Source: Euprymna scolopes
Lineage: Eukaryota
Reading direction: 5' to 3' (one strand)
Length of the DNA stretch: 64,000 bases
Assembly (NCBI GenBank): GCA_053919585.1
Contig: CM132806.1
A program made the translations under genes and the position numbers. Below, piece after piece: positions 16,049-57,547 of the stretch. The notes below the pieces were generated by a model. The model was not told the DNA's origin. It searched no databases and saw only the letters and a program-made list of their open reading frames with translations. The first letter of the stretch is position 1, and each line of letters starts with the position of its first letter.

Positions 16049-16983
16049 ATACATATGTATATATATATATATAATTTACTACCTAGTTCTACTTATGTAT
16101 TGAGCTCTTTCGAAGTAAATACTGAAAATAGATGTATAAACTTTTATGTAGATATATAAAATAATACATATATACACATATATAGCGATAAAGAGAGATT
16201 ACTTCATGTGCCTATAATATCAATATTATAAGAAAGTAGTTTATTTTATGCATCGATATTCAGTGTGTACTCAATATGTGAATGCAGCTAGGTAGTAAGT
16301 TATGAAAACAGATATGGGAAATTAAAGTGCGCAAAATCATCTGCGTAACATACCTACACATATGCAGAAAACAATTGCGATGAACTGTGGAAGGATATGT
16401 GTGTCTGAACTACTATTAATTTCCATACTTTACCACGTGTGTATATGAATAAACCCTTTTTCGGGGTCAACGGCCAACTAGCACCGTGTGTGTTTGTGTG
16501 TGTGTATGTATGTGTGTGTTGGGGTGGAGACGACTCCCGTAAGCCGTGATGAAGGCAACCTTTCTAGGAGGAGCAAATATCTGATTTAAAAACCATAAAG
16601 CGGGAGACCAGAACCTGCATTAAGCTGGTCTGCAGTTTAACTTGTTGCTGGCTATCTTGCTCTTGCTTGTTGCTGGATCTCAACATTTTGAACCGAGAGA
16701 GAAACTTAGCTGTCGTACAAAGCTAAGACTCTGTAACATCATCTTTGTATAGATACTTCCTCAAGCATTTGTTTATAAAAATGGTCCCGTGCCGATAGAA
16801 AAGTTGTGATGCGTGGAGGCTTGAAATGCTGGAAGCATGTAATAATTCATCTCATTGACCGTCTTCAGTGTCATGCCTACTTGAGCATGTGAATTCACCG
16901 GTAGGACTAAAAAAAAGTCATTTTTTGGCTCATGGACCTTAAGTGTCTGAGGGAGTGGCACTCGTCTGACAAGACGTTGCAAT

Positions 16984-17024
<41 letters not shown>

Positions 17025-17065
17025 AACGGTCGGGTTTCAATCCTGGCTTGAGGTAGTTGCCTGTC

Positions 17066-17119
17066 TAGCCGCACTGATGAGCTGTTAAACAGCGAAACAG
17101 TACTGTATGTGGATGACTA
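17066..17119 (+). ncRNA. Type I hammerhead ribozyme, copy 1
   Basis: TAG-CCGCA-CTGATGA-GCTGT(TAA)ACAGC-GAAA-CAGTACTG-TA-TGTGG-(ATGA)-CTA; GUA cleavage after 17107. Confidence 0.9.
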
Positions 17120-17266
17120 TAGTGCTCCTCACCTTGAGTTGAGCATATTGAGAAGTGAAACACGAATTACCATTAGCATATAAGCGACGCTCTTTGTGTA
17201 AACAAATCGAGCGGAGGTATTTCGGACGATATCAAAACATCGTTAAACTCACTACTCGTTCAAGCA

Positions 17267-17338
17267 GCCGCCAATAGCGTAATGGTTAGGAGCCTTGACT
17301 GCCGTACAAACGGTCGGGTTTCAATCCTGGCTTGAGGT
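17267..17338 (+). promoter_or_regulatory. tRNA-derived head with Pol III A and B boxes (repeats every 284 bp)
   Basis: A box TAGCGTAATGG (17275-17285) matches TRGCNNARYGG. B box-like GGTTTCAATCC (17317-17327) sits in a T-arm hairpin GTCGGG/CCTGGC. The anticodon-like loop CTGCCGT suggests a Gly-GCC origin; the acceptor stem is imperfect. Confidence 0.75.
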
Positions 17339-17349
17339 AGTTGCCTGTC

Positions 17350-17403
17350 TAGCCGCACTGATGAGCTGTGAAACAGCGAAACAGTACTGTATGTGGATGA
17401 CTA
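17350..17403 (+). ncRNA. Type I hammerhead ribozyme, copy 2
   Basis: Same fold as copy 1 with stem II GCTGT-GAA-ACAGC; cleavage after 17391. Confidence 0.9.
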
Positions 17404-17633
17404 TAGTGCTCCTCACCTTGAGTATAGCATATTGAGAAGTGAAACACGAATTACCATTAGCATATAAGCGACGCCCTTTGTGTAAACAAATCGAGCGGAG
17501 GTATTTCGGACGATATCAAAACATCGTTAAACTCACTACTCGTTCAAGCAGCCGCCAATAGCGTAATGGTTAGGAGCCTTGACTGCCGTACAAACGGTCG
17601 GGTTTCAATCCTGGCTTGAGGTAGTTGCCTGTC

Positions 17634-17687
17634 TAGCCGCACTGATGAGCTGTGAAACAGCGAAACAGTACTGTATGTGGATGACTA
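17634..17687 (+). ncRNA. Type I hammerhead ribozyme, copy 3
   Basis: Identical to copy 2; cleavage after 17675. Confidence 0.9.
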
Positions 17688-17917
17688 TAGTGCTCCTCAC
17701 CTTGAGTTGAGCATATTGAGAAGTGAAACACGAATTACCATTAGCATATAAGCGACGCTCTTTGTGTAAACAAATCGAGCGGAGGTATTTCGGACGATAT
17801 CAAAACATCGTTAAACTCACTACTCGTTCAAGCAGCCGCCAATAGCGTAATGGTTAGGAGCCTTGACTGCCGTACAAACGGTCGGGTTTCAATCCTGGCT
17901 TGAGGTAGTTGCCTGTC

Positions 17918-17971
17918 TAGCCGCACTGATGAGCTGTGAAACAGCGAAACAGTACTGTATGTGGATGACTA
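17918..17971 (+). ncRNA. Type I hammerhead ribozyme, copy 4
   Basis: Identical to copy 2; cleavage after 17959. Confidence 0.9.
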
Positions 17972-18201
17972 TAGTGCTCCTCACCTTGAGTATAGCATAT
18001 TGAGAAGTGAAACACGAATTACCATTAGCATATAAGCGACGCCCTTTGTGTAAACAAATCGAGCGGAGGTATTTCGGACGATATCAAAACATCGTTAAAC
18101 TCACTACTCGTTCAAGCAGCCGCCAATAGCGTAATGGTTAGGAGCCTTGACTGCCGTACAAACGGTCGGGTTTCAATCCTGGCTTGAGGTAGTTGCCTGT
18201 C

Positions 18202-18255
18202 TAGCCGCACTGATGAGCTGTGAAACAGCGAAACAGTACTGTATGTGGATGACTA
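18202..18255 (+). ncRNA. Type I hammerhead ribozyme, copy 5
   Basis: Identical to copy 2; cleavage after 18243. Confidence 0.9.
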
Positions 18256-18485
18256 TAGTGCTCCTCACCTTGAGTTGAGCATATTGAGAAGTGAAACACG
18301 AATTACCATTAGCATATAAGCGACGCTCTTTGTGTAAACAAATCGAGCGGAGGTATTTCGGACGATATCAAAACATCGTTAAACTCACTACTCGTTCAAG
18401 CAGCCGCCAAAAGCGTAATGGTTAGGAGCCTTGACTGCCGTACAAACGGTCAGGTTTCAATCCTGGCTTGAGGTAGTTGCCTGTC

Positions 18486-18534
18486 TAGCCGCACTGATGA
18501 GCTGTGAAACAGCGAAACAGTACTGTATGTGGAT

Positions 18535-18539
<5 letters not shown>
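18486..18539 (+). ncRNA. Type I hammerhead ribozyme, copy 6
   Basis: Identical to copy 2; cleavage after 18527; the array ends immediately after stem I, in (TA)n. Confidence 0.9.
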
Positions 18540-18597
<58 letters not shown>

Positions 18598-20600: not shown

Positions 20601-22315
20601 TGCAGCTAATTCTACCCTATGCGACGAAGGCCATTAACTCCCCATAACTCCTAAAACACAGTACAAGCAAGGTAACATACAAATATCCGTGCATGAGGTC
20701 ACCAAGCTAATCAAGAACCTAGATTCCAGTAAAGCAACTGGCCCTGATGGTATCCCATTATAGTGTTAAAAAAGCTTAAACCAGAACTTGCTCCCATACT
20801 TACGAAACTGTTTAAGCGCTGCCTTAAGGAGAAGTGCTTTCGCCTCCCTGGAAGACCTCATCAGTTTGCCCTGTATTTAAGAATTCAGGTGATAAGTCAT
20901 CTCCCTCTCAGTACAGACACATAAGTCTCCTGTGTGTTATGAGTAAGTTGCTGGAATCCATATTAAATAGAGAAATAGTCAACCACCTCAGCAGAAATAA
21001 CCTTCTTAGTGACACGCAATATGGTGTCCGCTCTGCAAGATCTACCGCAGATGTGCTGACGGTTATATCCCACAGGATTAGTGAATCTCTTGACAAAGGT
21101 TTCCTTTCTAGGGCAATTGCTCTTGACATATCAAAGGCCTTCGACAAGGTATGGCATAAGGGTCTATTTCACAAGATTTCCAGCTACGGTATAACTGGAA
21201 ATGTTTTCTCAATCATTAAATCATTTCTCTCCGATAGGCTCATAAGGGTAGTGGTTGATGGACAAAAATCGGAGGCCTGCAATATAAATGCTGGAGTTCC
21301 TCAGGGGTCAATACTAGGCCAAAACTCTCTTCCTGATCTACATCAATGACCTCCCTAAACACATACTTAAATCTTTCGTTGACATCTATGCTGATGACAC
21401 GACCATCTACGGCAACACATCAAAGGCTGTAAATGACAAAGTTCTCTCTGATTCTCTCTCCTCTGATCTCGAGCGCGTGGTTCGGTGAGGGAAGATGTGG
21501 CTGGTTACCTTTAATGCATCCAAAACCAAACTCCTATCCTTACATCATCGACGCTCTGATCCCCATCTGGCATCAATTGTGATGGATGGCGTTCGTCTGG
21601 GAGAGGCCCCGTGTTTTGACATGCTTCTGGGTTTGACCTTTACTCCTGATCTGAAATGGAACACGTACATCAAGTCTGTTGCCAAGGTCGCTGGAAAGAT
21701 GGTGGGATCCTTCTACTGCTCCAGAAGATATCTCACTACTGATGCAATTCTCTATTTATATGAAAGCCAAGTACGTCTAAGGATGGAATACTGCTGCCAT
21801 ATCTGGACAGGAGCTGCAAAAAACAGCCTAACCTGCCTTGACAGAGTACAAAATAGACTTCGTGGCTTAGTGGGGATGCCCTTTTCTCTACCATGCAATC
21901 TCTCTCCCACAGAAGAAACGTTGCGAGCCTATCCTTGTTTTATCGTTATTTCCATGGCTGGTGCTCGTCTGAACTCCAATCTCTGGTCCCCCCTCGCCAA
22001 CCTTTCACGAAAAACACCCGTCTAGCTGAATCCACTGTGAAAAATTTCCCCCACTCTTTATCTGTGCCTAGATCAAAACGTGGATTCCATGAACAAAGCT
22101 ACTTTCTTAGAACTGCACGCCCGTGGAACTCTGTTCCTCTGCCTGCTTCCCACCTGACTACAACTTGGATGTCTTCAAGTCCAATGTTAACAAATTCCTA
22201 ATGAACCGCCCCCTTAAGTAAACACTTCATCAAATCTCCACACTAACGTAATGTACTTGCAATAACCCTTATCCATGAGTGATATCCGGGCCTTGATAAG
22301 CGGTGATCACTGTGT

Positions 22316-27231: not shown

Positions 27232-28871
27232 TGCGGTACATGAAAAACCCGTCGAGAGAAAGATCACGAAACATTGCCTATCCTCTTCTGATGACCTTAC
27301 ATCATTTCGGTCGGGAACGAAATATTCCAGAACTACAAATATCCAGAGAAAATATTAATATATATGTAAATTTCCAATGTAAGCGTTTTACGTTCAAACA
27401 ACAATATATTCTGTCATCCGTTCGCTTCAAAACTAGTTTTAGTTACATTTCAGACATAAGTGTTTTCCATTATCATTATTATTATTATTTTAAAATAAAT
27501 GTTTTCAGTGTATTTATTGACAGAATGATGAATTCTTAAAATATCTAAAATATTATATCGATTGTAGCCATTGTGAACAGAAATTAACCTTCTGTAAAAG
27601 AACTATGAAAAATGTAGGTATGCTTGCATCTGGGAATAACGTTATTATTATCTATGTTTACTAGCACATATACTTAGTTTACTAACAAATGAACCACGAT
27701 AAAGATTCTATTATATTATTCTTCAACATTATAAAAAGTCTATTCATAAAAGACAAAAAATGCCGAATTTCCGTAGATCTAGATGCGATCAAGAAAATGA
27801 TGATAGTTTTTTAATTTGATGATGCTGCTTACATCATCATCATCACACAATGGAACATATTTATTTAATAAAAAACGCTTTTAAAGATTTATAAAAAAAA
27901 TAAAAAAAAGACTACTAAATCTGACATTACCAATGAAAGAAAATCAATTAATTACAAATCCAGAAATTAAAAAAAAAAATCTGTAATTTTTTAAAAATTT
28001 GCATTTAATAATGAAGATACTGCACGGAGTAAACATTTTCAAAAACTCAGAAATATATAAGTATTATCTTTTACCATTTTCGGTTTAGCATTTTTGTATA
28101 TTTCATAATGAATTTACAATCGGAATTTATTTTACTAGTTATTCATATTAAATACGGAAATACCAGTTCTGTGTCTGCTATATAATAGAATGTTTTTGCT
28201 ATATACTGTCTTAACTACACTATAGATTGCGTTTTTAATATATAATACAATGTGTTTTTGCTATATACTAGTATACTATTTTTTGCTATATAATTTAATG
28301 CGTTTTTGCTATATGAAAAGAATGTGTCAGCTATGAAAAGGAATGTTTCATCTATATAATAAAATGTGATTGCTGTATAATAGAGTGTGTTTTTGCTATA
28401 TATAAGAATGTGTTATCGCAATAAAAATGTATTGTTGCTATATAATAAAATGCATGTTTGCTACATAATATTATGTGTTTTTGCTATATCATTGAATGTG
28501 TTTTTTTTATAAAATAGAATGTGTTATTGCTATAAAAGTGCGTTATTGCTATATAATTAGCAGTGTTTTTGGTCTATAATATAATAGAAAGCGTTATTTC
28601 CCAAAAAATAGAATGTATTATTGATATATAATAGAATGTGTTTTGCTATATCTTAAAATGTGTTATTGCAATACATAAAATGCGTTATTTCTATACAACA
28701 GATACATCTGTTTTTACTATATAATAATAATAATAATAAATGTTTTTGCCATATAATAGAATGTGTAATTACCATATAAGAAAATTTTGTTTGGTGTATA
28801 ATAAGATGTGTTATTGCAATATAATAGAATGTGTTTTTGCTATATAAAAGGATATTTTTGCTATATAACAG

Positions 28872-28905
28872 TGTAATGTTGTGACCCTTTCTTTTATTAT
28901 TATTA

Positions 28906-28949
<44 letters not shown>

Positions 28950-29576
28950 TCGAGCGACGGCGGATCGCTTCATTAATTATTATTATTAGAAAAATAAACA
29001 ATTAAATTGAGTAAAAGGAATGTGAAAATAGAAAATAGATGTAAACATGATTTTTGGTTCGCGTAAAGAAATAACTAGATTGGGGTTACATCAGCTGTTA
29101 GTCTGAGACACGTAATAAAATTAATATTTGGGGAGTCGTTAGCTGGACATCAGAGAGAACGAATGTCTCAAAAAGGGGATTTAGTCTCTCCATGACGCAG
29201 GGAGCGGCGTCATTTCAGGCAAACAAGATGTAAAAATGTGTAATCTCTGAAGATGCCGGCCGGATCATGCAAATAAATGTTTGTAAATAATTCAGGTATG
29301 TGTTGTGTTATTTACTTCTGTTAAAAATAACTGTTTGTCTACAACTGTTTCGATACGTCCACGCCAATAATTTCGTGTTAGAACCGTTGCATAAATATTA
29401 AAATATACACAATAGACGATCATCTAAATGATACGACGTATAGAAATTCACGCATTTACACGTACATGAATATACAGATAAAATAGTAAACCCAACTATG
29501 CAACATGTACGTCGTTACTAAATATATTCACACACATTACCAAACAGGACCCTTTTTAGAGCCCCATAACATAACA
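28872..29576. mobile_element. Solo LTR with 4-bp TSD (ACAG) inserted in the satellite
   Basis: Termini TGTAATGTTGTG / CATAACATAACA are imperfect inverted repeats (TG...CA). ACAG lies at 28868-28871 and 29577-29580; removing the insert restores TATAACAGAATGTG. Confidence 0.7.
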
Positions 29577-30895
29577 ACAGAATGTGTTCTTGCTATTAAT
29601 AAGATGCGTTTCATCTATATAATAGGATGTGTAGTTGGTATATCAAAGAAATTGTTTTCCTATATAATAGAATGTTTCTTTGCTATACAATAGGATGTGT
29701 TATTGCTAAAAATAAGATATGTTATTGCTATATAAAGAATGTGTTTTTGCAATATAATAGAATGCGTAATTGCTATATAATGGAATGTAATATTTTTATA
29801 TAGAAGTATATGTTATGAAAAAATATATAAAATAGAAATTGTTTTTGCTGTATAATAGAGTGTGTGTTTTTGCTGTATAATAGAGTGTGTGTTTTTGTTG
29901 TAAAATGGAGTGTGTGATTGCTATAAAAATGTATAATTGCTATATCAGATAATGTGGTTTTGCTAAAAATAGAATAGAGTTTTGCAATATCACAAACTGT
30001 TTTCTGCTGCATAATAGAATGTGTTTAGCTATATAATAGAATGTGCTTTTGCTATATAACAGAATGTTTTTTGCGATATAAAACATGTGTTTTGTTATAA
30101 TAATGTATTATTTTTATATAATATAATGTGTTATTTCTCTATAATAGAGTGTGTAATATAATTAAATTGTGTTTTGTTATAATAGAATGTAATTTTTCTA
30201 TATAATAAAATGTTTTGCTATAGAATAGAATATGTTTTTGCCATTAAATAAGATTGTGTTTTCGCCAGAAAATACAATGTGTTTTTACTATATAATAGAA
30301 TGTGTTTGTGCTATATAATAGAGTGTGTTTTTATATAATAGAATCTGTTTTGCTATATAAAAGAATGTGTTATGCTATATAATAAAATGTGTTTTTCTAT
30401 GTAATAAAATTTCATTATAAAAAAGAATGTTTTTATATAAAAGAATGTGTTTTGCTATATGATAGAATGTGTTTTTGCTAGATTATAGTTTTTGCTATAT
30501 AATAAAATGTGCTTTTGCTATATAATATAATGTAATTTTTCTATATAATATTGCTATATATGTGTTATTGCTGTATATGTGTTATTGCTGTAGATTAGAA
30601 TGTGTTTTTATGTTTTATATATATTGTTATTGCTTTACATTGGCATGTGTTTTCTATATAATAGAATGTTTTTCTTATATTGTAGAATATGTTATTGTTA
30701 TATAATATAATGAGATTTTGTTTATACAATAAAATGTGTTTTTCTATATAATCAGTTGTGTAACTGCTATATGATATAATGTGGTATTTCTGTATAAAGG
30801 AAAGAAAGTATTGCTTTATAACACAATGTGTATTTGCTGTGTAATAGAATGTGTGTTTGCTATATAATAGAATGTCTTTTTGTTATATAATAGAA

Positions 30896-31323
30896 CTAGC
30901 CTAGGTATCCGGCGTTACCCGGGTGTTTGGAGGTGTGTGTTGAGCTAAAAACGTGGTAATAGGCAATCATGTTAGAACCCGTACCACGAAGAAGGAAAAG
31001 AATATGGAAAAACGTGACATCTTGGCGTTTCAGCCCATCGCCAAACTGGAGGTGGCGAAGGTTTAAATTAAGGCTAGTCAATCAAAAAGAGGGTTAATTT
31101 TGGAAAATATCGGCGAAACAAAGCGACCCCTTCATGTAGAAAAGTGCCTAGTGTAGTGTGAATGAATTTATGTTTTTAGCAAATTTTTCGATATTTGTCG
31201 TCCGAAAGGTCGAGCCTTAAAACGATACGGATCTCGTGAAAATCCGCCGCCTCTGTCAAAAGTTTAAGACAGACATAGATACACACATATATTGAAACAG
31301 AGAGGTGAGATATATATAATCGA
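30896..31323 (-). mobile_element. Non-autonomous Helitron (428 bp)
   Basis: The minus strand runs TC...hairpin CCCGGGTAACGCCGG...CTAG. It is inserted between A and T with no TSD, and removal restores the satellite TATAATAGAA|TGAGTTTTGCTA. Confidence 0.8.
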
Positions 31324-31642
31324 TGAGTTTTGCTACATAATAGAATGTGTTATTTTTATATAATAGAATGTGTTATTTTTATAGATAAGAACATGTTATT
31401 GCTATATAATAGAATGGGTTTTTACTATATAGTAAATTTGCTATTGTTATATAGTAGAATGTGTTATTGCTATAAATAAAATGTGTTATTGGTCTATAAT
31501 AGAATGTGTTATTTGCTATATAATATAAGGGTTTTTTTTCTATATAAAAATGTATTATTGCTTTAAATAAAATGTGTCTTTGCTGTATAATAGAATATGC
31601 TTTTGCTCTAAAATAGAATGTGTTTTTGCTCTAAATCAAATT

Positions 31643-32600
31643 GGTGCATAAAAGGAGATATGAACTTTTAAACACACCGAACGTTGGCACCTGCGTCTCT
31701 CAATTTAGGTATGGGAGCACGGACTCGATACAATTTTGAATAATATTTTATGTTTATTCTTTGAACTTAATTGAACATGGTTATTTAAAGAGATATGCGC
31801 TTTAAAAACATAAAACAATTGATAAAAAGTTCATGTATTTTTATATATTTTATAAAGCTTTTGTTAATATATTTTTTCAAATATTTGTTTTTTTCAAGTA
31901 TAGTTAGTTAGTTTTTTTTTTAACTTGCGTAATCTATTACGATCTTTTTTATCAATTATTATTCTTTTATTTTTTTAATCTAATATTTTTATCGATTTAA
32001 AAAATGTAATCGCATATCTTTTCAAATAACTGTTTATTTAAATTAATATGTTATATATTTTGTCAAACTATTTAAATATAAAAAAATATATTTATTCAGA
32101 GAAACATCCAAAAAATATGAATGTGTCATAGTTTTTGCAGTTTCAAAAAGGTGAATGTGCAACAGAAAATAGCTTAACAGTTTAAAAGTAAACATTTCAC
32201 ATATGTTAAAAATATTAAATTCAAACAACATAATGAGTACGAATAGATTACGTGGGTTTAAATAATGAAACTAGGTATATTTGAAAAAAAACTAAATCTG
32301 TTTGAAAGAATATATCTAAAAAAAAAATTTTTAATCTATAAAAAATATATAAAATACATAAACTTTTTATCAATTGTTATTTAAAAAAATGTTTTAACTG
32401 CATACATTTTATGCGATTAAAGCATTAAAAAGTAATTGATAAAATAAGTTTACGTATTTTTATATATTTTTTTAATATAGGGATTAAAGTAACATAAAAT
32501 ATAATTGAAAATTGTACTTTATGTGCTTTCATACCTAAATTGAGAGACGTGAGTGCCAACTTCCGGTGTGTTTAAAATTTCCTGTCTCCTGTTATGCACC
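31643..32600. mobile_element. Foldback/MITE with long terminal inverted repeats
   Basis: GGTGCATAAAAGGAGA...TTTAAACACACCGAACGTTGGCAC..CGTCTCTCAATTTAGGTATG is mirrored at 32520-32600; the AT-rich interior is also partly inverted. Confidence 0.8.
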
Positions 32601-34544
32601 ATTACCGTCAAATGTGTTTTGCTTTATAATTGAATGTGTTATTGATATATAAGAAAATGTGTCTTCCTATATCACAGAATATGTTATTGCTATATAATAG
32701 AATGTGTATTTACTATATAAAAGAATGTGTTCAGTCTATGTAATAAAATGTGTTTTGAGCTGTACATTAGAATGGGGTGAGTAATTTCTCTATGGATTCC
32801 GAAAAGGCTGAACCGATATATTCAAAATGTCATACCACTGTACTGTATGTGTCTGGAATGTTTTTATAAGGATGCATCTGATAAGCATTGAAAATCAATA
32901 ACCGAAACAAATCTCATTAAAAAAACGGATAACCCGAATCTGACTCTTATATAGCCTAACATCACAATTGCATTTGAGAAGTTTTATCAGCGCGAAAGCA
33001 GAAGAGTCTTGAGTATAAGACAGTGCCCGTTCTAAATAGATACCTTTTGTAAAACGCAATTAAACCATGGTAATTGACGTTTTCATTTTAAACTCTTATT
33101 CAAGCAAACATATAAAAATAATTTTATAATATCAACATTAGTTTCTCTACAGTGCCACAATATATTCTGGACTATTCACTGCGGGATGGCATGTGAACTC
33201 CCCTCCATGATGCATCCCGGTAGCTCTTACACTAGAATAGCCAAAATCAATGAGTTTTGGTTTTTAAAAAAAATGAACAAATTAATCGATTTCGATGGCA
33301 ATACATATTTGGAAGTGTAGATCATTTGTTGCTCCTCATTATTTCCTGGGCAACGTCGGATTTCTCAGCTTGTTATAGTATATTGAAATGTGCAATGTCA
33401 TATTTTCTTGATTGGTCTGTATTATACAAATATTTAAAACGATGAAATCATTTGATGAATTAAGAGAACGTCTCGATAGATATTTATTGACCTTGGCTTT
33501 GACATCAGCCAGTTAATAATAATAACGCGGCAGCTCTGGGATAACGTGTTCTGCATATAGAAAGTTCTTAGCCATTAACTTTGCTCATGGAAGTTTTGTT
33601 GGACTTTTGGCACACAGGATAAGATGGGTAAGTTTGCTTAAGGTGTGATAGCAAGATGAACGTTCCCAGTTGGTGACGTTAACCACTTAGCCATCATCAG
33701 ATTTCGTTACTGTTAGTAGTATATACTTTTTAGCCTTCTAATTTTTTTAAAAGTAACTTCGGTTATATTTTTCCGAAGGGCTTTTGCTTTCTGTCTGCTA
33801 TGCTATCGACTCCATAGCTTCATTCATTCATCTTTAATGAATCATATAATTACTGTTGGCATATGTTTCCCCGATATCTTTCTAGTTAGAAGCTTTTTTT
33901 TTCGAAAAAAAGATCAGGAGGAAACACATGTACGTTGTTACATCCCTAAGTGAAATTGTTTTAGTGGGACGAACTGAAGTCAAACTTGGCACACCTAGGT
34001 CTTCACTTTCTGTCGTAAAACGTTTAACAACCATCATAACGTAATGTTACAAGATCAGTAATCATAAGCTCCAAGATGCGATTTTTCTTTTACTCTCCTT
34101 ACTCTGAAAACATCAAATCAAAATGATTGTTAACTTGGCAATATATTATTAAGATAAAAAAGAAGACGCCTGAACTGTGATAGTTGTATTAAAAGTGTAT
34201 TAGCAAAAGAAAAAAAAAGGAAAGAAAGATAAGAAGAAAAGCGAATACTGTTAAAAACACGCGGGAATTAAATACTTCCTTGTTGTGGTTAGCCGCAAGA
34301 AAATTATTTGAGCAACAAAAACTTGGCCTTGCATTCGTTTCCACTCCATTGATCACCAAAGTTAAACATGAATTTAAAACCGATGCCAAAATTATATTAT
34401 CAAAATCACCGCCTCGGGCAGTTCTATATTTAACTTGCTCGGCGGGGGAGTTCATTCTTTCTGGCCCGTGAAACGTAATGGTTTCTTCTTTAGGAAGTGT
34501 CCGCTTATTTCCTCAGAAGTAATAAATTATATCTTTGTTTTTAA

Positions 34545-54544: not shown

Positions 54545-54818
54545 AACAGACTATGGATACCCACGAAGGGGTGCCTGCGCGTGAAATTTTTTGTAGTAGG
54601 AGGTGCCCAGTCTCAAACCACATATCTCCTGAGTCGACATTTTTAAATGACAATGGCAAGTGAAGTGGATGTACAAGACGACTGGAAACAAATGCCGTAA
54701 GAGCACATACAGCGCCGAGAATTCCCAAATGGTAACCATCTGGTATTAACAGGGCTCAACGTTGCTTAACTTCGATGATCTGAGGAGAACCGGTGTGTAA
54801 ACGCGATTATGCCGTATG

Positions 54819-54820
<2 letters not shown>
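54545..54820 (-). mobile_element. 5S rRNA-derived SINE-like element
   Basis: Minus strand GGCATACGGCATAATCGCGTTTACACACCGGTTCTCCTCAGATCATCGAAGTTAAGCAACGTTGAGCCC...GCTGTATG is 5S-like; the body is shared with the 1163 copy. Confidence 0.75.
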
Positions 54821-56326: not shown

Positions 56327-57547
56327 CGAGGGCGTGCAATAAGTAATGCCCCTGACCCATTTCTAGTTGTCTGACTAGCTGAAATTTTGTATGTGCAATG
56401 ATTTATATCTCTACGGATTATGTGGCAAATGACAGCTCTAAAGTAATTATGGTTTCTGTTTTACATGTGTTTGAACTGAGTCGGGTGTGAAATGGAGCCT
56501 GTTGAATGTCGAGCAGTGATCCGGTTTTTATATTTGAAAGGACGCACAGCACAGGAGACTTTTGATGAAATGAAAGAAACTTATGGTGATAATGCCCCAT
56601 CATATGACCTTGTAAAACGCTGGCATCGTGAATTCAAACATGGCCGGAAGTCTGTGGAAACAGCTCCCAGTCCTGGTCGCCCCCTTTTGCCATTGATGAG
56701 GTATCTGTCCGTCAAGTTGAGGCTACCATTTTGGAAGATCAGTGCATTACTATTCGCCAAATAGCCTAAGATGTCAAGCTTAGTATAGAGTCTGTGGAAA
56801 CTATCAGTCATGACCATTTGCATATGCATAAGGTGTCTGCCAGATGGATCCCCAGGTTGCTCACACCATTTCAGAAGCGAGCACGATGCTGAGTCAAAGT
56901 TTTTCAAAAGACTGATTACACAGGATGAAACCTGGGTCCATCACTATGATCCTGAGAGCAAAGCCCAGTCAATGCAGTGGAAGCACTTGAACTCACCAGC
57001 TCCAAAGAAAGAAAGGGTGCAGCCCTCCGCTGGCAAGGTCATGCTCACAGTCTTCTGTGACAAAGACGGAGTAGTGACGACAGATTTCCTGACAATGAAT
57101 GCCACAATTACAGGAGCCTATTATGCTTCACTTTTGAGGAAATTAAGGGAAGCTATAAAAATCAAGAGGCGGGGAAAAATCAGCAAAGGTACCCTCCTCC
57201 TGCAGGAAAACGCTCCGATCCTCAACACGCATGTCGCCAGATCAGAAGCACAGGCATGTGGTTACGAAATCCTTCCCCATACTCCCTACTCACCTGACCT
57301 TGCACCCTCTGACTTTCACCTTTTCCCAACCATGAAGTTGTTTTTGAAAGGAAATCGTTTCCCAGATATTGCAGCCTTGATTTCTGAAGTGTTCTACAAA
57401 AACGGTCTCCAGAGCTGCATGAAACGATGGGGGAAATACATAACTCTGGGTGGTTCATATGTAGAGAAAGAATAATAACCGTGCCAAGTTAAATTGCTCT
57501 ACTGGCATGGGAAGTGGGTCAGGGGAATAACTTAATGCACACCCTCG
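56327..57547 (+). mobile_element. Near full-length mariner (DD34D) transposon, inactive
   Basis: TA|CGAGGGCGTGCAATAAGTAATGCCCCTGACCCA ... TGGGTCAGGGGAATAACTTAATGCACACCCTCG|TA TIRs with TA TSD. Confidence 0.93.
56492..57475 (+). pseudogene. Frameshifted mariner transposase
   Basis: HTH N-terminus (ORF 56492-56764); TQDETWVHHYDPE, LLQENA (second catalytic D changed to E) and YSPDLAPSDFHLF (ORF 56810-57475). Confidence 0.9.

What the first reader, a model, noticed from the sequence alone, without database searches (positions are those of the whole stretch)
17021..18541. Retrozyme-like system: Pol III tRNA head fused to a hammerhead ribozyme in a 284-bp tandem array
Seen: 5.35 near-identical 284-bp units with six complete type I hammerheads (CUGAUGA and GAAA core, GUA site, stem I with ATGA bulge, 5-bp stem II). 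Each ribozyme follows a tRNA-like sequence with a consensus A box and a near-consensus B box (the first head is truncated). No coding potential is evident. Established: tandem hammerhead repeats (non-LTR retrozymes, Schistosoma SMalpha, newt satellite 2) are transcribed as multimers, self-cleave to monomers and can circularise, and are thought to be mobilised by Penelope-like RTs. Inference: this is a young, self-promoting, self-processing non-coding replicon yielding 284-nt linear or circular RNAs. Whether this family is already described cannot be judged here.
Basis: partly seen in the sequence, partly recalled or inferred. Interest (0 to 1): 0.92.

Follow-up and report, generated by a model that had tools for sequence, protein, structure and literature searches.

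The report
Hammerhead-ribozyme SINE-like retroposon array
The 284-bp tandem array is real and is one multi-unit copy of a very abundant, non-coding mobile element of a mollusc genome: a tRNA-related head, a hammerhead ribozyme and a (TA)n tail. It is a new member of the known animal "retrozyme" / Schistosoma SM-alpha kind, not a new kind of system.

Summary
Window 17021-18541 carries 5.35 units of 284 bp (98% alike) with six complete type I hammerhead motifs, cut site A|U at 17107|17108 and then every 284 bp. There is no coding potential.

New here: the array is one insertion of a dispersed family. The 5.9-Gb genome holds 10,992 exact copies of the element's 3' end joined to a (TA)n run, but only 1,641 internal unit junctions. 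Every copy examined ends at the same base, 14 nt past the cut site. The 5' ends are truncated at variable points (about 35 to over 3,400 nt). That is the signature of target-primed reverse transcription.

An abundant young Penelope-like element (RT + GIY-YIG) in the same genome also abuts (TA)n. It is the likeliest mobiliser, but it shares no sequence with the unit.

The Pol III "tRNA head" is only weakly supported:
- ARAGORN and Rfam find no tRNA, and the A/B boxes match at near-chance level.
- Sister subfamilies do carry canonical B boxes.
- 5 of 90 unbiased insertions begin just upstream of the A box.

Self-cleavage, circles and Pol III transcription could not be tested, because only contigs were available.

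Verdict: new member of a known kind (non-LTR retrozyme / SM-alpha-like SINE).

The parts
17021..18541 (+). Whole insertion: 5.35 tandem units of 284 bp. It is 5'-truncated inside the head (first unambiguous base 17023) and ends at unit position 101.
16988..17022 (.). (AT)n at the 5' junction. It is the target microsatellite, and also the end of an unrelated high-copy repeat at about 16450-16990.
18538..18591 (.). (TA)n at the 3' end (tail or target remainder). The same feature follows all copies examined.
17066..17119 (+). Hammerhead 1 (type I); cut after 17107. Loop II carries G>T.
17350..17403 (+). Hammerhead 2; cut after 17391.
17634..17687 (+). Hammerhead 3; cut after 17675.
17918..17971 (+). 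Hammerhead 4; cut after 17959.
18202..18255 (+). Hammerhead 5; cut after 18243.
18486..18539 (+). Hammerhead 6, the terminal one present in every family copy; cut after 18527.
17021..17055 (+). Truncated first tRNA-related head (B-like box 17033-17043; A box missing).
17262..17339 (+). Complete tRNA-related head (unit 242-284 + 1-35): A-like box 17275-17285, B-like box 17317-17327. It repeats at 17546-17623, 17830-17907, 18114-18191 and 18398-18475; the last has a mutated A box.
17122..17261 (+). Body (unit 102-241) with no recognisable feature. It repeats every 284 bp. Units 2 and 4 carry the private B variant (columns 120, 121, 171).
2906..3163 (+). Second, divergent member of the superfamily: canonical B box GGTTCGATCC at 3069-3078, hammerhead near 3098-3160, and (TA)n on both sides.

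Best explanation
The array is one multi-unit copy of a high-copy, non-coding, non-autonomous retroposon of a mollusc genome. Each unit has a degenerate tRNA-related head, a type I hammerhead ribozyme and a 140-nt body. The element always ends 14 nt past the ribozyme's cut site and is followed by (TA)n. In kind it is a metazoan non-LTR retrozyme with the architecture of Schistosoma SM-alpha.

Shown:
- about 11,000 dispersed insertions;
- one invariant 3' end;
- smooth 5' truncation;
- frequent (TA)n on both flanks;
- no coding capacity;
- presence in RNA libraries;
- co-residence with an abundant, young, (TA)n-associated Penelope-like element (RT + GIY-YIG).

Inferred mechanism:
1. Element RNA is made from the head by Pol III (about 50% likely) or by read-through transcription.
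2. It is copied by target-primed reverse transcription at nicked (TA)n, most likely by the Penelope-like enzyme.
3. Every insertion crosses the cut site within 14 nt of its 3' end. The template must therefore have been intact there: either never cleaved, or cleaved and re-ligated.
4. I favour an uncleaved linear RNA carrying a (UA)n tail for most copies (about 60%). A re-ligated circle read from the UAUA at unit 98-101 is the alternative (about 40%).
5. The folded hammerhead probably doubles as the 3' recognition module.
6. Its palindromic helix III predicts that it cuts well only when two ribozymes pair, that is, in multi-unit transcripts.

This particular array inserted into a (TA)n tract, probably as about 3.35 units, and then gained one 568-bp duplication.
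For: Family and ends:
- Own-genome search: 364 candidates on many chromosomes.
- Exact-pattern counts: 10,992 for the 3' end plus TA run, 1,641 for the internal junction, and 6,868 for the 33-mer hammerhead end plus tail. Reversed-pattern controls gave 0.
- All 16 + 90 copies examined end at unit 101.
- An alternative 3' end at an internal ATATA was found 2 times, against 2,563 normal copies of that site.
- The unbiased sample of 90 spans about 35-730 nt with smooth decay. 40 of 90 have TA-rich 5' flanks; the median pure (TA) tail is 30 nt.

Ribozyme:
- Core and helices are intact.
- The cofold of two ribozymes gives a double hammerhead with a 10-bp helix III: -34.2 kcal/mol against 2 x -12.5.
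- A C-G to U-A double change in helix II separates subfamilies.

Head:
- Sister subfamilies have canonical B boxes.
- Relaxed ARAGORN calls tRNA-Asp in 3 heads.
- 5 of 90 insertions start at unit 242-246, 9-13 nt upstream of the A-like box.

Penelope-like element:
- 15,395 GIY-YIG candidates, with open frames up to about 870 aa.
- RVT_1 + GIY-YIG domains.
- 3' ends abut (TA)n.
- One retrozyme copy lies tail to tail with such an element across a shared (TA)n.

RNA:
- Family contigs occur in poly(A) RNA-seq runs of 3 studies, while the unique flanks have zero depth there and 12-15 in a DNA run.

This array:
- The B variant exists nowhere else in the genome.

Literature:
- PMC7229834 and PMC7761336 (retrozymes).
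- PMC2770079 (SM-alpha is tRNA-Gln-like and carries a hammerhead).
- PMC8557442 (Penelope-like elements prefer (TA)n).
Against: - No Rfam hammerhead match reaches the gathering score (22-26 bits against 48.5).
- No tRNA is detected in this subfamily, and the box matches are near chance.
- The 5'-end excess is modest (5 observed, about 1.6-1.9 expected, P about 0.03-0.04).
- The abundant Penelope-like family shares no sequence with the unit. No hammerhead core was found within 1.5 kb of its endonuclease domain.
- No target-site duplications were found.
- The RNA-to-DNA depth ratio is no higher than for neighbouring unrelated repeats, so the RNA could come from read-through.
- Cleavage, circles and Pol III dependence are untested.
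- Within-array (0-3%) versus between-array (2.4%) divergence does not separate linear from circular templates.
Confidence: 0.78

Rival explanations
1. Classical retrozyme cycle. Arrays are transcribed by read-through and the hammerheads cut them into 284-nt monomers. A host ligase (RtcB) circularises the monomers. A Penelope-like reverse transcriptase then copies the circle by rolling circle from a (TA)n nick annealed to the UAUA at unit 98-101. This yields truncated copies and homogeneous multi-unit arrays. The head plays no promoter role.
For: - All insertions cross the cut site and end where the element's own TATA merges with (TA)n.
- A 9-unit array (L004) has 1 difference in 2,570 bp, while arrays differ from each other by about 2.4%.
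- Insertion lengths decay smoothly past 284 nt with no full-length step.
- Published model and in vitro circularisation of mussel and axolotl retrozymes (PMC7229834).
Against: - Three other (A/U)4 sites in the unit are essentially never used as 3' ends (2 against 2,563), so microhomology alone does not explain the end.
- 56% of copies have a non-TA 5' flank yet a long (TA)n on the 3' side.
- A small excess of 5' ends at the head start is not expected from a circle.
- The ABABA pattern here is explained by an in-place duplication.
- No circle was observed.
Confidence: 0.35
2. An ordinary tRNA-derived SINE mobilised by a LINE with a (TA)n tail. The hammerhead-like 3' module would be only a stem-loop recognised by the reverse transcriptase and would not cleave in vivo. 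Tandem units would come from template switching and unequal crossing-over.
For: - The head, 3' module and simple-repeat tail layout, the 5' truncation and the high copy number are classic SINE features.
- Rfam does not accept the ribozyme at threshold.
- Arrays demonstrably grow by segmental duplication.
Against: - All invariant hammerhead core bases, all three helices and a GUA site are intact across about 11,000 copies and several subfamilies, with one compensatory change.
- RT + GIY-YIG elements that sit at (TA)n are abundant here.
- No LINE with this tail was seen, although none was searched for systematically.
Confidence: 0.12
3. Plain satellite DNA or an assembly artefact, with a chance hammerhead-like motif.
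For: The locus is a perfect-period tandem array between two simple repeats.
Against: - The same unit occurs with the same 3' end at thousands of loci on all large contigs.
- Independent DNA and RNA runs contain it.
- The reversed-pattern controls gave 0 matches.
Confidence: 0.02

Closest known systems
Schistosoma SM-alpha / Sj-alpha SINE-like elements (Ferbeyre et al. 1998; PMC2770079)
   Same: - A unit of about 300 bp that combines a tRNA-related part with a type I hammerhead. tRNAscan SM-alpha copies tRNA-Gln.
- Both tandem and dispersed copies, with more than 10,000 copies.
- Non-coding.
   Different: - Different phylum (mollusc against flatworm).
- The head here is not recognised as a tRNA and looks Asp-like in sister subfamilies.
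- The invariant 3' end 14 nt past the cut site with a (TA)n tail is documented here. I could not check it for SM-alpha.
- Sequence homology was not tested, because no SM-alpha sequence was available to the tools.
Metazoan non-LTR retrozymes (coral, mussel, axolotl; PMC7229834, PMC7761336)
   Same: - Tandem units of 150-450 bp, each with a type I hammerhead with a short helix III.
- Non-coding, dispersed, present in RNA, and co-resident with Penelope-like elements.
   Different: - The review states that retrozymes seem to have no promoter. This family carries a tRNA-related head with A/B-like boxes.
- Most copies here are truncated single insertions, not arrays.
- G+C is 45.8%, against the stated <45%.
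- Circular RNA was not shown here.
Newt satellite 2 and avocado sunblotch viroid hammerheads, and Penelope-like minimal hammerheads
   Same: A weak helix III that can extend into an intermolecular helix, so two ribozymes pair into a double hammerhead (PMC6155905, PMC7761336).
   Different: Here helix III is 3 bp plus a tetraloop, with a full helix I bulge. This is not the minimal Penelope-type motif.
Penelope-like elements (Neptune and Naiad types; PMC8557442)
   Same: (TA)n insertion preference, partial tandems, inverted neighbours, and no clear target duplications.
   Different: The element here encodes nothing. The resident RT + GIY-YIG family shares no sequence with it, and no hammerhead was found in that family's 3' region.

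Membership tests
Hammerhead ribozyme, type I | Conserved core CUGAUGA ... GAA, with A15.1-U16.1 | tested here: met
   Present in all six copies.
Hammerhead ribozyme, type I | Three helices, with helix I open and helices II and III closed by loops, and an NUH cleavage triplet | tested here: met
   16 standard or G-U pairs and a GUA triplet. The named fold scores -7.9 kcal/mol, and the double hammerhead is the lowest-energy dimer.
Hammerhead ribozyme, type I | Match to the Rfam covariance model at gathering score | tested here: not met
   No hit at gathering score. The best is Hammerhead_3 at 22.4-26.3 bits against 48.5, a partial threading that uses the upstream CUGUC.
Hammerhead ribozyme, type I | Site-specific self-cleavage | not testable with these tools
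   Only assembled contigs of RNA runs were available, so RNA ends are not visible.
Metazoan non-LTR retrozyme | Short tandem non-coding repeats (150-450 bp), each with a type I hammerhead | tested here: met
Metazoan non-LTR retrozyme | Dispersed at many loci (mobile) and co-resident with Penelope-like elements | tested here: met
Metazoan non-LTR retrozyme | Expressed as monomeric linear and circular RNA | tested here: inconclusive
   Family contigs occur in RNA libraries, including a 283-nt contig. Circularity and ends are not visible, and the RNA-to-DNA ratio resembles that of neighbouring repeats.
Metazoan non-LTR retrozyme | Low G+C (<45%) | tested here: inconclusive
   The unit has 130 G+C in 284 bases, or 45.8%, which is borderline.
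tRNA-derived SINE | 5' head derived from a tRNA, with Pol III A and B boxes | tested here: inconclusive
   - A box 10/11; B box 9/11, at chance level.
- No tRNA by ARAGORN or Rfam.
- Sister subfamilies have canonical B boxes and 3 relaxed tRNA-Asp calls.
tRNA-derived SINE | Defined 5' end at the head (transcription start) | tested here: inconclusive
   5 of 90 insertions start at unit 242-246, against about 1.6-1.9 expected.
tRNA-derived SINE | Simple-repeat 3' tail, 5' truncation, high copy number | tested here: met
tRNA-derived SINE | Target-site duplications | tested here: not met
   No consistent duplication among 43 copies with a non-TA 5' flank. This is expected for Penelope-type integration.
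SM-alpha family (Schistosoma) | Sequence homology to SM-alpha | not tested
   No SM-alpha sequence was available through the tools. The resemblance is architectural only (PMC2770079).

The most novel reading that the evidence does not exclude
This would be a retrozyme family that carries its own Pol III promoter. Current reviews say retrozymes have none. Its folded hammerhead would be the 3' recognition module for a (TA)n-targeting Penelope-like reverse transcriptase. Its roughly 11,000 precisely bounded insertions would give the first genomic read-out of how retrozymes are copied: from a template intact across the cut site, either circular or uncleaved.
Probability: 0.3. Interest if true: 0.7.

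Novelty: new member of a known kind. Interest (0 to 1): 0.45.

Why it matters
Two questions about animal retrozymes are still open: what transcribes them, and how and from which RNA form they are reverse-transcribed. This family has features that make both testable:
- a candidate internal promoter;
- one invariant 3' end next to the ribozyme;
- about 11,000 truncated insertions at (TA)n;
- an abundant candidate mobiliser in the same genome.

A 5'-end histogram, empty-site comparisons, Pol III inhibition and a retrotransposition assay could address these questions in one organism. On its own, the locus is an ordinary copy of a known type of selfish element.

Tried and rejected
- Rfam at gathering score over the whole window returned only two 5S rRNA matches.
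- The Rfam tRNA model on the head alone, at E up to 10, returned nothing. The same was true on six sister loci.
- ARAGORN at default settings found nothing.
- Raw-read RNA runs were sought twice and none was offered. Cleavage ends and circles could therefore not be read.
- Similarity between the unit and 12 Penelope-like loci: none. A relaxed hammerhead-core scan of those loci: none.
- Target-site duplications: none found.
- Within-array against between-array divergence, to separate a rolling-circle from a linear template: not discriminating.
- A source array for the ABABA pattern: the B variant is unique to this locus. Rolling-circle copying of an AB dimer is therefore not needed to explain it.
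- Absence of TTTT in the unit as evidence for Pol III read-through: rejected, because a 284-nt sequence of this composition lacks TTTT about 40% of the time (own arithmetic).
- The Ferbeyre 1998 paper is not held.
- Correction: start positions printed are 2 too high and lengths 2 too short, because the sequences were cut at unit 99. The corrected values are used in this report.
Full report
**What is in the window.**
- Tandem Repeats Finder reports one array at 17021-18541: period 284, 5.4 copies, 98% matches, no indels. It lies between (AT)n at 16988-17022 and (TA)n at 18538-18591.
- Aligning the units gives only six variable columns.
- Three linked columns (120, 121, 171) alternate perfectly: units 1/3/5 against units 2/4. 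This is a 568-bp ABABA pattern.
- No ORF exceeds 55 aa and none starts with ATG.

**Anatomy of a unit (unit position 1 = window 17305).**
- *Hammerhead helices and core.* Positions 46-99 form a complete type I hammerhead.
  - Helix I pairs 49-53 with 88-92 and 46-48 with 97-99, around an AUGA bulge at 93-96.
  - The core CUGAUGA lies at 54-60.
  - Helix II pairs 61-65 with 69-73, with a GAA loop.
  - GAA follows at 74-76.
  - Helix III pairs 77-79 with 84-86, with a GUAC loop.
- *Cleavage site.* The cleavage triplet is GUA, and the cut falls after A87.
- *Pairs and energy.* All 16 pairs are standard or G-U. The named fold scores -7.9 kcal/mol, against -12.5 for the lowest-energy fold of the isolated 57-mer.
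- *Dimer.* The helix III region ACAGUACUGU is a perfect palindrome. Two copies cofold into a double hammerhead with a 10-bp helix III at -34.2 kcal/mol. Newt, viroid and Penelope-type hammerheads behave this way (PMC6155905, PMC7761336).
- *Rfam.* Rfam does not accept the motif at its gathering score. The only hits are Hammerhead_3 partial threadings of 22-26 bits against 48.5.
- *Head and body.* Positions 242-284 plus 1-35 are the "head". Positions 102-241 are a featureless body.

**The array is one copy of a dispersed retroposon family.**
- *Copy number.* A search of the window's own 5.9-Gb assembly found 364 candidates on many chromosomes.
- *Exact-pattern counts* (reversed-pattern controls gave 0):

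| Pattern | Matches |
|---|---|
| 3' end joined to a TA run | 10,992 |
| Internal unit-to-unit junction | 1,641 |
| 33-mer hammerhead end plus tail | 6,868 |

- *The 3' end is invariant.* In 16 loci from the first search and an unbiased sample of 90 loci along contig C1, every copy ends at unit position 101 (...GGATGACTATA). That is 14 nt past the cut site and exactly at the end of helix I. A (TA)n run follows, with a median pure length of 30 nt.
- *The 5' ends vary.* Lengths run smoothly from about 35 to about 730 nt in the unbiased sample (median about 175). They reach more than 3.4 kb in selected arrays.
- *Flanks.* 40 of 90 copies also have (TA)n on the 5' side. No target-site duplications were seen.
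- *Other TA-rich sites are not used.* An end at the internal ATATA occurs twice, against 2,563 normal copies of that site.
- *Reading.* A fixed 3' end, variable 5' truncation and a simple-repeat tail are the signature of target-primed reverse transcription, with the hammerhead strand as the RNA.
- *The template was intact at the cut site.* Every insertion crosses the cut site within 14 nt of its 3' end, so the template was either uncleaved or re-ligated. A cleaved linear monomer would need a template jump after only 14 nt.

**The head.**
The Rfam tRNA model finds nothing even on the 91-nt head alone at E up to 10.
  - The A box is 10/11 and present in four of the five complete heads (22 found against 11.5 expected in the window).
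  - The B-like box has two mismatches, which is chance level (66 found, 64 expected).
  - Some carry canonical B boxes, GGTTCGATCC or GGTTCGAACC. One such copy is in this window at 2906-3163.
  - With a relaxed threshold, ARAGORN calls tRNA-Asp(GTC) in three heads.
  - Five of 90 insertions begin at unit 242-246 (AAGCAGCC / AGCAGCC / AGCCGCC), 9-13 nt upstream of the A-like box, where a Pol III start is expected. Their lengths to the 3' end are 140, 143, 143, 428 and 712 nt, close to 143 + 284k. The expected number is about 1.6-1.9 (P about 0.03-0.04, positions corrected by -2).
- *Other recurrent 5' ends.* Many other recurrent 5' ends begin with TA or AT (for example TATTTC, ATCCTG, ATATAAG). 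That fits microhomology with the (TA)n target.
- *Rating.* I rate a functional Pol III promoter at about 50%.

**RNA.**
- The family is held by eight runs on record as RNA, from four studies (two of those runs gave identical contigs). These include poly(A) RNA-seq runs labelled invertebrate or mollusc metagenome. It is also held by runs of a second, differently labelled organism, where a 283-nt contig covers one full unit with 4 differences.
- In RNA runs X7 and X17 the unique flanks of the array have zero depth, while a DNA run covers them at 12-15.
- X7 holds 293 million letters, under 0.05x of the genome. The family's depth of thousands therefore cannot be DNA carry-over (my arithmetic; summed contig depths are rough).
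- However, the RNA-to-DNA depth ratio is no higher than for unrelated neighbouring repeats. Read-through transcription is not excluded.
- Only contigs were offered, so RNA ends, strand and circles could not be read.

**Candidate mobiliser.**
- The genome holds 15,395 GIY-YIG candidates. Most of the 150 best-scoring ones give near-identical scores, with open frames up to about 870 aa.
- Two translated copies have RVT_1 followed by a C-terminal GIY-YIG domain, the Penelope-like combination.
- Their 3' ends abut (TA)n in two alternative forms that differ by an extension of about 45 nt. Inverted partial copies lie nearby. These traits are described for Penelope-like elements, which prefer (TA)n targets (PMC8557442).
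- One retrozyme copy (L022) lies tail to tail with such an element across a shared (TA)n.
- Against the link: there is no sequence similarity to the unit, and no hammerhead core within 1.5 kb of the endonuclease domain. The partner is therefore inferred, not shown.

**How arrays arise and grow.**
- Multi-unit copies are a minority: 24 of 90 insertions exceed 284 nt.
- A 9-unit array (L004) starts exactly at U88, the base a hammerhead cut would expose. It has one difference in 2,570 bp.
- A more than 20-unit array on C18 carries private mutations and a 12-unit segmental duplication.
- Within-array mismatch is 0-3%, against 2.4% between arrays. This does not separate rolling-circle from linear templates.
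- The B variant of this window's units 2 and 4 occurs nowhere else in the assembly. The simplest history is therefore an insertion of about 3.35 units, two mutational events in one unit, then one 568-bp tandem duplication.

**Most likely mechanism.**
- Shown: the retroposition signature, the invariant ribozyme-adjacent 3' end, (TA)n association, presence in RNA, and a co-resident Penelope-like family.
- Inferred steps:
  1. Transcription starts from the head (Pol III) or comes from read-through.
  2. The folded hammerhead serves as the 3' recognition module.
  3. Priming occurs at nicked (TA)n.
  4. Limited processivity gives the 5' truncation.
- For the template, I favour an uncleaved linear RNA with a (UA)n tail (about 60%). 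Three points support it:
  - Other UAUA-like sites are not used.
  - Over half of the copies have a unique 5' flank but a long 3' (TA)n.
  - A few 5' ends coincide with the head start.
- The double-hammerhead prediction would let single-ribozyme transcripts escape cleavage, while multi-unit transcripts are cut.
- The published circle model remains viable (about 35-40%). It best explains homogeneous long arrays.

**Comparison and novelty.**
- The class is known: metazoan non-LTR retrozymes (PMC7229834), lately argued to derive from Penelope-like elements (bioRxiv 10.64898/2026.07.22.740005).
- The specific fusion of a tRNA-related part with a hammerhead in a unit of about 300 bp, both tandem and dispersed, is the SM-alpha architecture of Schistosoma (PMC2770079).
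- The review literature says retrozymes seem to lack promoters (PMC7761336). A promoter-bearing mollusc family would therefore be a noteworthy variant, but the evidence is weak.
- I found no description of this family in the searched papers. I could not consult Dfam or Repbase.
- The host is a mollusc by run labels. The genome size and the more than 45 large contigs suggest a decapodiform cephalopod; this is inference only.
- Verdict: a real feature, a new member of a known kind, of moderate interest as a test bed.

Noticed in passing
window 2906-3163 (+): A second, divergent member of the same superfamily. It has a canonical B box (GGTTCGATCC), a hammerhead whose helix II carries U-A where the main family has C-G, and (TA)n on both sides.
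   Followed up: partly
window 1168-1275 (+) and 54704-54819 (-): Two 5S rRNA matches above the Rfam gathering score (58.5 and 60.9 bits). The first lacks part of helix I. They may be 5S-derived repeats or pseudogenes, not genes.
   Followed up: no
window about 16450-16990: An unrelated repeat of about 550 bp and very high copy number: DNA-run depth up to about 1.2 million, against 12-15 for unique flanks. It ends in the (AT)n into which the array is inserted. Copies also occur in loci L023 and L029.
   Followed up: partly
window 20834-21349 (+) and 56810-57475 (+): A reverse-transcriptase fragment (RVT_1, E 6e-20) and a mariner-type transposase fragment (Transposase_1, E 4e-19). The surroundings are transposon debris.
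   Followed up: no
window 28222-32757: Long degenerate minisatellite arrays of a 23-bp unit (AGAATGTGTTATTGCTATATAAT), up to 59 copies.
   Followed up: no
L111-L122 (e.g. L117:190-2440): A very abundant, young Penelope-like family (15,395 GIY-YIG candidates). It has two alternative 3' ends about 45 nt apart, both abutting (TA)n, and inverted partial copies next to full ones. No hammerhead core was seen in the 3' region.
   Followed up: partly
L022 (G000:C1 about 2.599 Mb): A 66-nt retrozyme copy lies tail to tail with a Penelope-like 3' end across one (TA)n. Upstream, two inverted copies of a different hammerhead-like 3' end (…GGTACTGCATGTGGATTACTA) face each other across another (TA)n.
   Followed up: no
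run X2: A run guessed to be RNA covers the unique flanks evenly at about 4.5x, so it behaves as a DNA run. It was not counted as RNA evidence.
   Followed up: yes
unit column 171 (e.g. window 17475): The same C/T position varies independently in this array (units 2 and 4) and in the otherwise uniform 9-unit array L004. It may be a hypermutable or RNA-level variable site.
   Followed up: no
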